DNA of 64,000 bases from Octopus sinensis (taxonomy: Eukaryota): assembly GCF_006345805.1 (NCBI RefSeq), contig NC_043019.1, positions 3,534,001-3,598,000 of the forward strand. The letters are read 5' to 3'. A program made the translations under genes and the position numbers. Positions 3,531 through 34,160 of this stretch are shown here, piece by piece (position 1 is the first letter of the stretch; each line of letters starts with the position of its first letter). The notes beneath the pieces were generated by a model. The model saw nothing but the letters and a program-made list of their open reading frames with translations, was not told the DNA's origin and searched no databases.

Positions 3531-4714
3531 ATATATATATATTGGCGTTAGGAAGGGCATCCAGCCGTAGAAACACTGCCAGATTTGACTGGGCCTGATG
3601 AAGCCTTCTGGCTTCACAGACCCTAGTAGAACCGTCCAACCCATGCTAGCATGGAAAACGGACGCTAAACGATGATGATGATGATGATGATATATATACA
3701 TGGGGTGGGGATTTAGGTAATCAGGAAACAAGAAGAATTTTAAAGGCTTAAATGATCATTGAAAATAGATTAGAAGGTACAATCAAATGTCTTTAGTCTT
3801 TAAGGTCAAGATCAATCTGTACATTATATATAACTGAAGCATGTATCATCATCATCATCATCATCATCATTATTGCTGGATTTTGAAAACAATGTAGGTT
3901 CCGGGTTCAGTCCCAGTGCGTGTCACCTTGGGTAAGTGTCTTCTACTATAGCCTCGGGCCGACTAAAGCCTTGTGAGTGGATTTGGTAGACGGAAACTGA
4001 AAGAAGCCTGTCGTATATATGTATATATATATATGTGTGTATGTGTATATGTTTGTGTCTGTGTTTGTCCCCCCAACATCGCTTCACAACCGATGCTGGT
4101 GTGTTTACGTCCCCGTAACTTAGCGGTTCGGCAAAAGAGACCGATAGAATAAGTACTCGGCTTACAAAAGAATAAGTCCCAGGGTCGAGTTGCCACTCCT
4201 GCGCCTATGCTAACAATATGTTAACACCATCCAAGCGTGATCGTTGCCAGAGCAGCCAACTGGCTTCCATACCCGGGGCACGTAAAAGGGCACCATTTGA
4301 GCGTGATCGTTACCAGCATCGCCTTAATGGCACCTGTGCTGGTGGCATGTGTAAAAAGATTTGAGCGAGGTCATTGCCAGTACTACCTGACTGGCCCCCG
4401 TGCCAGTGGCATGTAAAAAGCACCCACTACACTCTCGGAGTGGTTGGCGTTAGGAAGGGCATCCAGCTGTAGAAACTCTGCCAGATCAAGATTGGAGCCT
4501 GGTATGGCCGTCTGGTTCGCCAGCCCTCAGTCAAAATCGTCCAACCCATGCTAGCATGGAAGGCGGACGTTAAATGATGATGATGATATGTTTACACTAC
4601 ATGTTCATAAACATGTTTGCACTACATTAACTTGTATGTCAGAAAACAGTAAAAACACCTGAGGTTATGTTAGATGTATATTCACCATTGAGATAACATT
4701 GAGATAATAATTAC

Positions 4715-13576: not shown

Positions 13577-13636
<60 letters not shown>

Positions 13637-14728
13637 TATATGTATATATATATATAATATATATCCATATATCTATCTATTTATATATGTGTATGTGTGT
13701 GTGTGTGTGTGTGTGTTAGAAATGTTTTAAACAGAAATTTTGACAATCAATGGATTGGCAGATAAGGTCCTGTGTCTTAGCTTCCGAGGTTCCCAGACTT
13801 AACTCCCATTGACTTTTTTTCTATCTTTTATCTCATACTTCTTTAAGTCATTTGACTACATTCATGCTGGGGCACTGCATTGAAGAGGTTTAGACAAACA
13901 AACTGACCCCAGGACTTTTATTTTTTCTTTGAGCTTAGTACTTATTCTATCGGCTTGTTTTGCCAAACCACTCAGTTACAGGGATGTAAACACACCAACA
14001 CGGTTGCCAAGTGATGGTGGGGGACAAACACAGACACAAAGACAAAGACAGATATAGATATATATATATATATATACATGGCAGGCTTCTTTCAGTTTCC
14101 ATCTATCAAATCCAATCATGAGGCTTTGGTTAACCTGAAGCTATAGTAAAAGACACTAGCCCAAGGCACCACACTGTAGGACTGAACCTGAAACCATGTG
14201 GTTGAGAAGCAAGCTTCTTACCACACAGCCATGCCTGCGCCTGGGGGCATCTAAAGTCCAATGTTTATACAATTCATCCAAGAACTGTTGAAGAATTAAA
14301 AGAAAGCATAAGAATTTAATGTGGAGAAGCTGAGTCTGAAGTCTTGAATATTGTACAAAATTCTCTTTGGTTTCATTTTTGGAAACCTAATGAATGTGAG
14401 AGAAATCAGTTGGAATAATTAATCTAACCATTTTTTTTTTTTTCATTGTGAGTTAATCATTTTGTGATAACGAACGTTAGGAAAATAAAACAAAAGAGTA
14501 TTGTATCTCTTATACAAATGATTTTTCATGTGATTAGGATGGTGTGTGACTTTAGCACCACCCTGTACACACACAAACACACACACATCACACATATATA
14601 TATATATACAGAGAGAGAGAGAGACAAAGAGAGAGGTAAATAATAATAATAATTAAATTATTGTATACAGTGCTCAGGTGAACCACAACTTGTCAAAAAA
14701 AGAGAAAGCAAGCAGACCAGCCACTGGA

Positions 14729-14801
14729 TGCCAAAACCTGGGACTGAACCAGGGACCTTTAGATCTTCAGTCTAACGCTCTCCCAACTGAGTTATTTCGG
14801 C
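14729..14801 (-). pseudogene. tRNA-Phe: tRNA-Phe(GAA) retrocopy/pseudogene
   Basis: 73 nt, GCCGAAATAACTCAGTTGGGAGAGCGTTAGACTGAAGATCTAAAGGTCCCTGGTTCAGTCCCAGGTTTTGGCA. Cloverleaf with GAA anticodon; G10>A breaks the D-stem and the T-loop/B-box is altered (TTCAGT). Fused to a CR1 3' tail. Confidence 0.85.
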
Positions 14802-14819
14802 TGGTAGAGGTAGATGGAA

Positions 14820-15180: not shown

Positions 15181-16720
15181 CATAGATGGAAAAATCGATA
15201 TGTGTGCATGTAAGTGTGTGTAGGTGTATGTGTGTGTGTACAGATGTATATTATATGTGCATGCATATATGTGTGTCTGTAGAGAGAAAGAGAGAGAGAG
15301 AGAGAGAAAGAGAAGTAAAGTTAGAAATACTTAAGTAAAAGTTATGAGTTAGCTTACATGTTAAAGATTTGTGAAGATCAAAGCTGTTACAAGTTATGAG
15401 GACAGGTTCACTTTCTTTCCCTGTTTCTCTCGCTCTCTGTATATACACATATATATACCCATGTGTGTGTGTGTGTGTGTGTGAGCCTTGTAGAATTCAT
15501 ATGAGGCTATGGGATTGGGTGATGATGTTTGGAAAAGTTGGCAGAATTCTCAATAACAGTATTAACGGCAGTGATGATGATGATGGTGGTGGTGGTGGTG
15601 GTGGTGGTGGTGGTGGTTGCGGTTGTGGCCTCGCTAGTGGCAGCAATGCAAAAGTACTATAGCGGTATTGTTGTAAGCAGGCTACAATCAGTAAGGACAA
15701 AACCGGAAACAATTAGAAGAAAGTAGCTTTAAATAGGCATTGGAATTGTCCAGTGATAAGAGTGTATATATATGTGTTATATATATATATGTGTGTGTGC
15801 ATGCGTGTGTGTGTGTATGACGTGGCTATGAGGTAAGACGTTGGTTTTCCAGCCATATGGTTTCAGTTTCACAGCTTGGCACCTTGACGCCAGTGGTTTA
15901 ATTTATAGCCCTGAGTCGACCAAAGCCATGTGAGTGGATTTGATACAGGGAAACTGAAAGAAGCCCGTCGTATATATGTATATATATATATATATATATG
16001 TATATATGTGTATGTATATATATATATATATATATATATTTGTATGTGTATGTGTGTGTGTGTGTTTGTGTGTCTGTGTTTGTCCCCCCAGCATCGCTTG
16101 ACAACCGATGCTGGTATGTTTACGTCCCCGTAACTTAGCTGTTCGGCAACTGAGATCGATAGAATAAGTACTAGGCTTACAAAGAATAAGTCCTGGGGTC
16201 GATTTGCTGACTAAAGGCAGTGCTCCAGCATGGCCACAGTCAAAATGACTGAAACAAATATAAAGAGTATATACATATATATATTATATATTCACACACA
16301 TGCATATACATATATATATATATATATACATATCATTCCTCTCAACTCTATGCGGCTTCCACTCCAATATATTTGACCTCATCCTTCCCTTTCTTACTTC
16401 TTGACCTTTTTATTTTTTCAAATGTTTGTTTCTTTATTCTGACCTTCTGGCTTTTTTTCAACTCATTTCAACTCACATCTGTGGTGAAGTAACTTGGAAA
16501 TTCCAAGTGACGACGTAACCTTTATTTAATTAAAGAAAACTTGGCCTGATCGTTAATTAATTTGAGCACCGCTCATAGAGTGACTATTATATTAGAGGAC
16601 CCGCTGGTTAAGAGACATACGTAGCCTGCATTTTAACCCATTCCACTCCCTCAATTTGGAATTTTATTAATATTTGTAGCAACCTTAATTGCTAACTTAA
16701 AGCTATATATAAAATATAGT

Positions 16721-33253: not shown

Positions 33254-33537
33254 AGACAGACAGACATTTTGCCGTTTATATATAGAGCGATACGAATAAG
33301 TAAAAGTTTAAATCAGTGATGGAAATATAGATTTTAGAAACTTTTAGCAACCCAATAATGGGTTTTTAGGAACTTGGGGGTATGCTAAAATCCGTGAGCC
33401 GCCCTCAGCTCGTGCTCAAAAGTAAGAGAACGCAGTGCCCTAAGCAAACACAGCTCTCCATTTCTGTTCTTTCCTTTCTCATAATGTTGTCAATTCAAAT
33501 GATGACCACTGGGAAAATAAATACAAATGTTGTTTGA

Positions 33538-34160
33538 TAATAATAATAATGAAATTATAGTATACAGTGCTCAGGTGCACCGCAACTTGTCAAAAGTGCG
33601 TATAAAGCATATGCAGTAATGTACAAATGTCTGGGAAGCGAACAGTGTATGAGTCAGATACATGCTTGCGTGTGTATGGAGGGGAGAAAATCAGGTGTAG
33701 TGTTGGCGAATCTCAGGAAGCATGGAAGTTTTGAAGGATGCAGTGCTCCGACAACTAACAACTGATGCCGGCAGTTTGTTCCATGCTTCAGCAACTCTTA
33801 GCGTGAAAGAATGTTTCCGAAAGTCATGGGAGCTGTGCTGTTTTCTGTCTTTGTAAACATGTCCACGGGTGTTAGACAGATGGAGTTTGAAAAGGTGCTC
33901 AGAGTTATTGTTTGTAAGATGGTTAATAATTTTATAGGTGTCTGCCAAGTCAACTGCCAGACGTCGGAGTTTCAGTGTATCCATGCCCAGGGAAGCAAGG
34001 CGTTCAGAATATGGCAAATGCCTGATGGAGGGTATTCTTTTGGTTGCACGTCGCTGAACAGCTTCCAGACGATTAATATCCGGGCAAGATAGGGGTTCCA
34101 GACCGGTGATGCAAATTCCAGGTGAGGTCGTACCATGGCTATATAAAGCCGTTTCATCCG
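33538..34160 (-). mobile_element. CR1/L2-group LINE 3' fragment
   Basis: LYIAMVRPHLEFASPVWNPYL / INRLEAVQRRATKRIP...YSERL...RRL..DL...TRGH...RV..AWNKLP; frameshift; 3' UTR ends in (ATT)n. Confidence 0.88.

What the first reader, a model, noticed from the sequence alone, without database searches (positions are those of the whole stretch)
14632..14812. Pre-tRNA-Phe fused to a CR1 LINE 3' tail: chimeric retrocopy or nascent SINE
The minus strand reads: 4-nt leader ACCA, full tRNA-Phe(GAA), 27-nt trailer, T7 run (Pol III terminator-like), then 44 nt matching the 3' end of the CR1 at 33.55 kb at 41/44 positions, then (ATT)n. AGAGGTA at 14632-14638 and 14806-14812 looks like a 7-bp TSD. This is the architecture expected if CR1 RT switched template onto an unprocessed pre-tRNA at TTTTGAC microhomology, analogous to U6/L1 chimeras, and is one route by which tRNA-head/LINE-tail SINEs arise.
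Basis: partly seen in the sequence, partly recalled or inferred. Interest (0 to 1): 0.75.

Follow-up and report, generated by a model that had tools for sequence, protein, structure and literature searches.

The report
Pre-tRNA-Phe fused to LINE tail
A dead, one-off retrocopy in an octopus-like genome joins an unprocessed phenylalanine pre-tRNA to the last 44 bases of a very common LINE; it is a clean example of a known accident of LINE reverse transcription that recurs often in this genome, and it is not a new SINE.

Summary
On the minus strand, 14812-14632 reads: TACCTCT, leader ACCA, tRNA-Phe(GAA), a 27-nt trailer, T7, 44 nt of a LINE 3' end, (ATT)4, TACCTCT.

A tandem tRNA-Phe gene cluster on contig C6 (4.205-4.332 Mb) carries the same ACCA leader and the same trailer core. 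Homology to those genes starts at about -4 and stops in the T-run. The 5' part is therefore a Pol III primary transcript, not a mature tRNA and not a DNA duplicate of a gene.

The 3' part matches an extremely abundant APE+RT LINE family: 42/44 to the family majority and 43/44 to one subfamily.

The junction occurs once in the 2.72-Gb genome, and a T7 terminator separates head from tail. It is a single dead chimera, not a SINE family.

About 27 other dispersed copies carry this tRNA-Phe trailer. Of the 16 dispersed copies I examined, 10 are fused at their T-run to other SINEs. The SINE-A fusions show four junction points and three source-gene trailers.

Template switching is the likeliest mechanism, but RNA ligation before reverse transcription cannot be excluded. 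The "CR1" label is plausible but was not formally tested.

The scan has already noted at least eight similar pre-tRNA/LINE chimeras elsewhere in this genome. No empty-site test was possible.

The parts
14806..14812 (-). 5' target-site duplication TACCTCT (AGAGGTA on the + strand)
   Evidence: Identical 7-mer at 14632-14638. Background rate is 0.24% with exact boundaries and about 2% with 2-nt slack.
14802..14805 (-). 4-nt pre-tRNA 5' leader ACCA
   Evidence: The same ACCA precedes 10 of the 16 tRNA-Phe genes recovered from the C6 cluster. Sequence further upstream is unrelated.
14729..14801 (-). tRNA-Phe(GAA) body, decayed: G10A, A58G, G63A, C69T relative to the cluster genes
   Evidence: ARAGORN. 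Rfam RF00005, 57.3 bits. Differences listed; two of the four are CpG transitions.
14702..14728 (-). 27-nt 3' trailer of the primary transcript (TCCAGTGGCTGGTCTGCTT...)
   Evidence: The trailer core TCCGGTGGCTGGTCTGC is shared with the C6 cluster genes. The nearest present-day trailers are C6:4225860 and C6:4331650, each 3 mismatches in 27. The apparent 'CCA' is encoded in the genes' trailer (TCCGG changed to TCCAG by CpG decay); it was not added post-transcriptionally.
14695..14701 (-). T7 run: Pol III terminator / oligo-U end of the pre-tRNA, overlapping by 0-4 nt the TTTT of the LINE (CACTTTTGAC)
   Evidence: Homology to the source genes ends here. LINE matches begin at the last 4 T (query positions 37/38-76; family sequences).
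14651..14694 (-). Last 44 nt of the 3' UTR of an abundant APE+RT LINE
   Evidence: 42/44 to the family majority, 43/44 to the GGTTCACC subfamily, 40/44 to the copy at 33.55 kb.
14639..14650 (-). (ATT)4 microsatellite tail of the LINE
   Evidence: All 30 family copies inspected end in (ATT)n-type repeats.
14632..14638 (-). 3' target-site duplication TACCTCT
33537..34150 (-). 5'-truncated copy (about 615 bp) of the same LINE family in the window. It carries the C-terminal 174 codons of the ORF plus a 3' UTR of about 155 nt and (ATT)n.

Best explanation
This is a single, dead chimeric retrocopy made in one retrotransposition event.

Proposed sequence of events:
1. The reverse transcriptase of an abundant APE+RT LINE (probably CR1/L2-like) primed on a nicked target at ...TACCTCT...
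2. It copied the (ATT)n tail and the last 44 nt of a LINE RNA.
3. It then continued on the oligo-U 3' end of an unprocessed Pol III primary transcript of a tRNA-Phe gene from the C6 cluster family.
4. It copied that transcript to its 5' end at about -4.

What is shown:
- the anatomy of the element
- the source gene family, and homology boundaries that coincide with the transcript ends
- the uniqueness of the junction
- the flanking TSD
- recurrence of equivalent chimeras from several tRNA-Phe genes

What is inferred:
- that the join was made by template switching at or in the TTTT of the LINE
- that this LINE family's own enzyme did it

The copy cannot act as a SINE. Any Pol III transcript started from its damaged tRNA promoter would stop at the T7 run before reaching the LINE tail.
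For: 1. Source genes. One search gives matches of 91-93% identity to query positions 1/7/8-114/118 only, that is, from the leader to the T-run. These lie at C6:4.205-4.332 Mb. Searches show 16 tRNA-Phe genes or gene-like copies there. Most carry the leader acca and the trailer tccggtggctggtctgc followed by a T-run. Their conserved upstream and downstream flanks are absent from the window copy.

2. The LINE part is 42-43/44 identical to a family with 33,328 first-look candidates. One member has a 995-codon open frame with Exo_endo_phos and RVT_1 domains.

3. The junction is unique. Only the window itself spans the 76-nt junction query. The 30-mer across the junction, allowing up to 3 mismatches, occurs once in 2.72 Gb.

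4. A 7-bp TSD flanks the whole composite, and no TSD flanks the LINE piece alone.

5. The two halves have similar divergence: 4/73 in the tRNA and 1-2/44 in the LINE tail.

6. Recurrence. The tRNA 3' end plus trailer motif occurs at 40 places, 13 in the cluster and 27 dispersed. Of the 16 dispersed loci I examined, 9 are fused 21-28 nt after the tRNA to one SINE, at SINE positions 1, 300, 330 and 387, and 1 is fused to another SINE. An exact-pattern count finds 7 fusions to the SINE head with three different source-gene trailers. Two of them come from one gene type and end at its first versus its second T5 run.
Against: - No empty orthologous site could be examined.
- No present-day gene has the exact trailer. 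The best are 3 mismatches in 27.
- The TSD is short and lies in low-complexity sequence, so its chance rate is about 0.2-2%.
- The genomic product cannot distinguish template switching from RNA-RNA ligation before reverse transcription.
- The 5' boundary is uncertain by about 3 nt, because TCT precedes ACCA both here and in two other retrocopies (L014, L017).
Confidence: 0.82

Rival explanations
1. Same single-event chimeric retrocopy, but the pre-tRNA and a LINE RNA 3' fragment were first joined as RNA by a cellular ligase. The ligated RNA was then reverse-transcribed from the LINE tail.
For: RtcB-mediated ligation has been shown to precede retrotransposition of U6/L1 chimeras (PMC6789731, found). 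The genomic product would look identical to what is seen.
Against: RtcB needs a 3'-phosphate or a 2',3'-cyclic phosphate. By general knowledge, nascent Pol III pre-tRNAs end in UUU-OH. Six of the nine SINE-A junctions, and all seven hits, lie exactly at the SINE 5' end. That is what an RT running off a template and switching would give. Nothing here tests RNA end chemistry.
Confidence: 0.1
2. Two independent events: an older pre-tRNA-Phe retropseudogene or a dispersed tRNA-Phe gene, and later a separate, extremely 5'-truncated (56-nt) LINE insertion into its T-run.
For: The LINE family is hugely abundant, and T-rich sites could be favoured targets. Genuine dispersed tRNA-Phe genes with unrelated SINEs 140-470 nt downstream do exist (L020, L021, L026).
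Against: - No TSD flanks the LINE piece alone, whereas TACCTCT flanks the composite.
- The tRNA part has transcript-exact boundaries and none of the gene flanks.
- Ten other loci show the same abutment at the T-run.
- The two halves have similar divergence.
Confidence: 0.05
3. Member or founder of a tRNA-Phe-headed SINE family with a LINE-derived tail (a nascent SINE).
For: It has the head-plus-tail architecture of tRNA-derived SINEs. Template-switch chimeras are the proposed origin of such SINEs (10.1101/081950; PMC4476161).
Against: - The junction is unique in 2.72 Gb.
- A T7 terminator lies between head and tail.
- The promoter-bearing tRNA is mutated at G10 and A58.
Confidence: 0.02

Closest known systems
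U6/L1 and other small-RNA/L1 chimeric retrocopies of mammals (Buzdin et al. 2002/2003, as cited in PMC4476161; Doucet et al. 2015, PMC4476161)
   Same: A full-length Pol III small RNA in sense orientation, ending at its oligo-U, is fused to a 5'-truncated LINE 3' end. One TSD flanks the composite. The events recur independently with variable junction points on the LINE/SINE side.
   Different: The captured RNA is an unprocessed pre-tRNA with its leader, trailer and terminator U-run. The partner is a non-L1 LINE with a microsatellite tail rather than poly(A), in a mollusc. SINE RNAs are the commonest partner in this genome.
tRNA/LINE-1 chimeras reported across mammals (bioRxiv 10.1101/2025.02.02.635956)
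   Same: tRNA sequence co-inserted with LINE sequence inside one TSD.
   Different: That paper reports 21 loci, mostly half-length tRNAs in antisense orientation, attributed to twin priming. Here the pre-tRNA is full-length, sense and unprocessed.
PittSINE/TguSINE1 origin model in passerine birds (Suh et al., bioRxiv 10.1101/081950)
   Same: In the proposed mechanism, a CR1-type RT switches from a SINE/LINE RNA to a tRNA and produces a tRNA-plus-LINE-tail chimera flanked by a TSD.
   Different: The bird chimera became an amplifying SINE family. This copy is unique and carries a terminator that would block transcription of the tail.
Pre-tRNA retropseudogenes of the human genome (Schmitz et al. 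2004, as cited in PMC4476161)
   Same: Reverse-transcribed copies of unprocessed nuclear pre-tRNAs, implying that nuclear RNAs are captured by LINE machinery.
   Different: Those are described as tailless or L1-mediated retropseudogenes without a fused LINE tail. I know them only through the citation and did not read the original.

Membership tests
Template-switch-type chimeric retrocopy (U6/L1-like) | The 5' module is a complete cellular small RNA in sense orientation whose boundaries coincide with the transcript ends. | tested here: met
   Homology to the C6 tRNA-Phe genes runs from leader ACCA to the T-run only. The gene flanks are not shared.
Template-switch-type chimeric retrocopy (U6/L1-like) | The 3' module is a 5'-truncated LINE or SINE 3' end with its native tail. 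| tested here: met
   44 nt plus (ATT)4, 42-43/44 identical to the LINE family 3' end.
Template-switch-type chimeric retrocopy (U6/L1-like) | One target-site duplication flanks the whole composite. | tested here: met
   TACCTCT at 14806-14812 and 14632-14638. Background rate 0.24% (exact boundaries) to about 2% (2-nt slack).
Template-switch-type chimeric retrocopy (U6/L1-like) | Recurrent independent events with different junctions and different source genes. | tested here: met
   Four junction positions on one SINE, a second SINE partner, and three source-gene trailers.
Template-switch-type chimeric retrocopy (U6/L1-like) | An empty orthologous site shows that both modules arrived together. 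| not testable with these tools
No related eukaryote genomes were on hand.
SINE family (tRNA head plus LINE tail) | Many genomic copies share the same head-tail junction. | tested here: not met
   The junction is unique.
SINE family (tRNA head plus LINE tail) | The Pol III transcript from the internal promoter includes the LINE-derived tail. | tested here: not met
   A T7 run lies between the trailer and the LINE tail. That T runs of 4 or more terminate Pol III is established knowledge. No expression was measured.
Functional tRNA-Phe gene | Canonical sequence and structure, and gene-type flanks. | tested here: not met
   G10A breaks a D-stem pair and A58G alters the conserved T-loop A58. The conserved upstream block of the cluster genes is absent.
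   L076 has a 995-codon open frame: Exo_endo_phos 5.5e-13, RVT_1 8.5e-36.
   No named reference LINE proteins were available. Hits carry no clade names. The C-terminal motif YPERL..LG...L..RR...DL resembles the CR1/L2 motif as I recall it. The element into which L076 is nested has RTE-like motifs. Both readings rest on memory only.
   The (ATT)n microsatellite is present in all copies. The predicted fold of the retained tail is no better than shuffled sequence (z = 0.87).

The most novel reading that the evidence does not exclude
In this octopus-like genome, capture of Pol III primary transcripts (pre-tRNAs still carrying leader, trailer and oligo-U) by LINE/SINE reverse transcription may be a frequent, ongoing process rather than a rare accident. 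There are dozens of tRNA-Phe events alone, arising from several source genes. Partners include at least two SINEs and a LINE, and alternative terminators are used. If so, the chimeras would form a genomic record of Pol III start and stop sites. Some composites with weak terminators (T3, for example L017 and C1:176719555) may have been re-transcribed and re-mobilised, which would be SINE birth caught in the act.
Probability: 0.35. Interest if true: 0.55.

Novelty: new member of a known kind. Interest (0 to 1): 0.35.

Why it matters
This locus is ordinary in kind, but it is unusually clean. Both ends of the captured RNA coincide with the ends of a Pol III primary transcript whose source gene family can be identified.

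It adds non-mammalian, non-L1 evidence for the proposed first step of the "SINE-birth" model, in which a LINE tail is joined to a tRNA. Here that step happens readily and acts on nuclear, unprocessed pre-tRNAs.

Taken together with the other tRNA-Phe chimeras found here and the earlier notes of the scan, a genome-wide catalogue in octopods looks feasible. Such a catalogue could quantify which RNAs LINE RTs jump to. It could also map Pol III start sites and terminators from DNA alone.

Tried and rejected
- **Fetching more of the genome.** I wanted the rest of the C6 cluster, C8:51928132, C1:176719555 and full-length LINEs. I did not use pattern searches to read out flanks.
- **LINE clade.** The word-based protein search and the Atlas returned only unnamed APE+RT proteins. 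Pfam found nothing clade-specific. The clade is left open.
- **TSD survey of 30 LINE copies.** An automated survey to learn the typical TSD length gave no clear signal, because the BLAST 5' boundaries were too imprecise. Only L076 (ATAAGAA), L042 and L063 showed 6-7-bp TSDs.
- **RNA fold of the retained tail.** Not better than shuffled sequence.
- **Mature-tRNA reading.** Rejected. The TCCA after the discriminator base is the genes' own TCCGG trailer after CpG decay, and it is followed by 23 more trailer bases.
- **Rfam hits near the locus.** The mir-297, mir-3149 and SCARNA7 hits are far below gathering scores and fall on TG/TA repeats. I treated them as spurious.
- **A first script using fuzzy regex timed out.**

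Full report
**Observation**

| Element | Coordinates | Sequence or note |
|---|---|---|
| 5' TSD | 14812-14806 | TACCTCT |
| Leader | 14805-14802 | ACCA |
| tRNA-Phe(GAA) | 14801-14729 | 73 nt |
| Trailer | 14728-14702 | 27 nt, starts TCCAGTGGCTGGTCTGCTT |
| T-run | 14701-14695 | T7 |
| LINE 3' end | 14694-14651 | 44 nt |
| Tail | 14650-14639 | (ATT)4 |
| 3' TSD | 14638-14632 | TACCTCT |

ARAGORN calls the tRNA, and Rfam's tRNA model scores it at 57.3 bits, E 3.9e-11.

One numerical correction is needed. Identity to the LINE copy at 33.55 kb is 40/44 over GAC...ATT, not 41/44.

A 7-mer repeated at this spacing occurs at 0.24% of positions in this microsatellite-rich window with exact boundaries. 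The rate is 1.6-2.3% if each boundary may slip by 2 nt. The TSD is therefore supportive, not decisive by itself.

**Source of the tRNA part**

The window belongs to a 2.72-Gb assembly of 13,516 contigs. Earlier notes of the scan call it an octopus, and the repeat content is consistent with that. I did not establish the species.

A search of the whole genome with the 181-nt element gave matches at 91-93% identity that cover only query positions 1/7/8 to 114/118, that is, leader to T-run. They lie at C6:4.205-4.332 Mb.

That region holds at least 16 tRNA-Phe genes or gene-like copies:
- Eleven have an identical canonical body.
- Most have the leader acca and the trailer tccggtggctggtctgc followed by a T-run of 6-20.
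- They share conserved blocks upstream and downstream.

The window copy shares none of those flanking blocks. Its homology begins at about -4 and ends in the T-run, which are the ends of a Pol III primary transcript.

The TCCA after the discriminator base is not a post-transcriptional CCA. It is the genes' TCCGG after a CpG transition, and 23 further trailer bases follow it.

Relative to the cluster genes, the tRNA body differs at G10A, A58G, G63A and C69T. Two of these are CpG transitions. G10A and A58G damage a D-stem pair and the conserved T-loop adenine, so the copy is a pseudogene.

No present-day gene has exactly this trailer. The closest are C6:4225860 and C6:4331650, each 3 mismatches in 27. 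A dispersed copy at C8:51928132 shares the GCTTG variant.

**Source of the LINE part**

The 3' 164 nt of the copy at 33.55 kb has many 96-98% identical relatives. Thirty copies all end in the same way: CACTTTTGAC, then the 44-nt stretch, then (ATT)n.

A subfamily with GGTTCACC matches the window's tail at 43/44.

The family is enormous, with 33,328 first-look candidates for its C-terminal 174 residues.

One copy, L076, has a 995-codon open frame with Exo_endo_phos and RVT_1 domains. It is flanked by a 7-bp TSD, ATAAGAA.

Is this LINE a CR1?
- Its C-terminal motif YPERL..LG...L..RR...DL resembles the CR1/L2 motif as I remember it.
- The element it is nested in has RTE-like motifs.
- CR1 families are reported to be recently active in Octopus vulgaris (PMC13282606), and RTE elements are also known there (PMC9115989).
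- Named references were not available, and the protein searches returned unnamed relatives.

"CR1" is therefore plausible but untested.

**One copy or a family?**

A 76-nt query centred on the junction is spanned only by the window itself. All other hits start at the LINE's TTTT.

The 30-mer across the junction, allowing up to 3 mismatches, occurs exactly once in the genome, with zero hits for the reversed control.

A T7 run also sits between head and tail. Any Pol III transcript from this copy would stop before the LINE tail; that T runs of 4 or more terminate Pol III is established knowledge.

This is a single, dead-on-arrival chimera, not a SINE.

**Recurrence**

The motif formed by the tRNA-Phe 3' end plus the trailer core occurs at 40 places with up to 3 mismatches: 13 in the C6 cluster and 27 dispersed.

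I held 16 dispersed loci:

| Class | Count | Loci or detail |
|---|---|---|
| Fused 21-28 nt after the tRNA to one roughly 440-nt SINE ("SINE-A") | 9 | SINE positions 1 (six loci), 300, 330 and 387 |
| Fused to a different SINE-like repeat | 1 | L014 |
| Ordinary genes with unrelated SINEs 140-470 nt away | 3 | L020, L021, L026 |
| Ambiguous | 3 | L015, L018, L028 |

An exact-pattern count found seven fusions of a tRNA-Phe trailer to the SINE-A head. They carry three different trailers that match three different gene types: the cluster type, the L021 type and the L030 type.

Two fusions from the L030 type end at that gene's first and second T5 run respectively.

Leaders are copied too. L024 has atca like its L030-type source gene, and L027 resembles its L020-type source gene in both leader and T-loop.

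These are therefore independent captures of Pol III-terminated primary transcripts.

The scan's earlier notes list comparable chimeras in the same genome for pre-tRNA-Lys (two loci), Met, Ile, Sec, Ser and Arg, plus a 5'-truncated Phe. I did not re-test those loci.

**Mechanism**

The product is what target-primed reverse transcription followed by a change of template would give:
1. Priming occurs on the (ATT)n tail.
2. 44 nt of LINE RNA are copied.
3. The RT continues on the oligo-U end of a pre-tRNA.
4. It runs off that RNA at its 5' end.

This model is established for U6/L1 chimeras. It is also the proposed route to tRNA-head/LINE-tail SINEs (PMC4476161; 10.1101/081950).

U-runs at the other junctions are 3-6 long. 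The T7 here therefore probably includes at least one T from the LINE's TTTT, which is compatible with 1-4 nt of microhomology. Microhomology is evidently not required, since the SINE-A junctions lack it.

Ligation of the two RNAs before reverse transcription, as shown for U6/L1 (PMC6789731), would leave the same product and cannot be excluded.

A two-event origin is disfavoured for four reasons:
- The LINE piece has no TSD of its own.
- The tRNA part has transcript-exact boundaries.
- The two halves have similar divergence (4/73 and 1-2/44).
- The many parallel loci show the same abutment at the T-run.

**Limits**

The LINE clade and the exact source gene remain open.

**Verdict**

The nascent-SINE reading is rejected for this copy.

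This is a new member of a known kind, and the scan has found the same kind repeatedly in this genome. The locus itself is of modest interest. The apparent frequency of pre-tRNA capture in this genome deserves a systematic census.

Noticed in passing
G000:C6:4205000-4332000 (loci L002-L013, L016, L030, L073-L075): Tandem or inverted cluster of at least 16 tRNA-Phe genes. Eleven have identical bodies. It also holds a divergent pseudo-type (ACCGAAATGG.../CCCGAAATGG...) present in two copies, and single genes with other trailers (4221089, 4229027).
   Followed up: partly
G000:C27:13805792-13805847 and G000:C8589:4652-4715; source type L030 = C6:4229027: Two chimeras from the same gene type end at its first T5 run and at its second T5 run respectively. 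A third (L024) ends two T into the second run. This looks like a DNA record of alternative Pol III termination.
   Followed up: partly
L017 (G000:C3847:4204-4262) and G000:C1:176719555-176719613: Two tRNA-Phe/SINE-A composites share the same junction, with only T3 between trailer and SINE (GCTTGTTTATAGGCG), and differ at 3 of 59 bases. They could be a composite element that was re-mobilised, or an old segmental duplication. The flanks of the C1 copy could not be fetched.
   Followed up: no
G000:C1:98845641-98851982: Three copies of the tRNA-Phe 3' end plus a GGTCTAC trailer variant lie within 6.4 kb. L014 on C30 carries the same variant. This may be a second small tRNA-Phe gene cluster or a tandemly duplicated retrocopy.
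   Followed up: no
L014:1496-1506 and L017:1496-1506: Two independent chimeras with different SINE partners share an 11-nt leader, tttatctacca. This hints at a source gene transcribed from at least -11. No such gene was seen in the parts of the C6 cluster I held.
   Followed up: no
L008 (G000:C23:18174386-18177481): The tRNA-Phe/SINE-A chimera is flanked by a roughly 60-nt inverted repeat (agaatgctggatggttgtaaaaatat... and its reverse complement). It may have inserted into a palindromic element or a MITE.
   Followed up: no
L076:1-730 and 3859-4001 (G000:C8:7983600-7987600): The LINE copy with the 995-codon open frame is nested, with TSD ATAAGAA, inside the coding region of a different retroelement. 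That host's translation has YADD and RWYGHVLRMDE / GRGRPRK motifs, which I recall as RTE-like.
   Followed up: partly
window:15200-15269, 13610-13714, 15704-15852: Rfam E-value hits to mir-297 and mir-3149 (on TG/TA microsatellites) and SCARNA7 (26.8 bits against a gathering score of 65). All are well below gathering thresholds and are probably spurious.
   Followed up: no
window:14821-15187 and 14570-14631: The chimera sits between a 367-bp (GATA)n array and a (CT)n(TA)n(TG)n block. Several other tRNA-Phe chimeras (L018, L025, L029) also lie in TA-type microsatellites, which suggests a target preference or tolerance for simple repeats.
   Followed up: no
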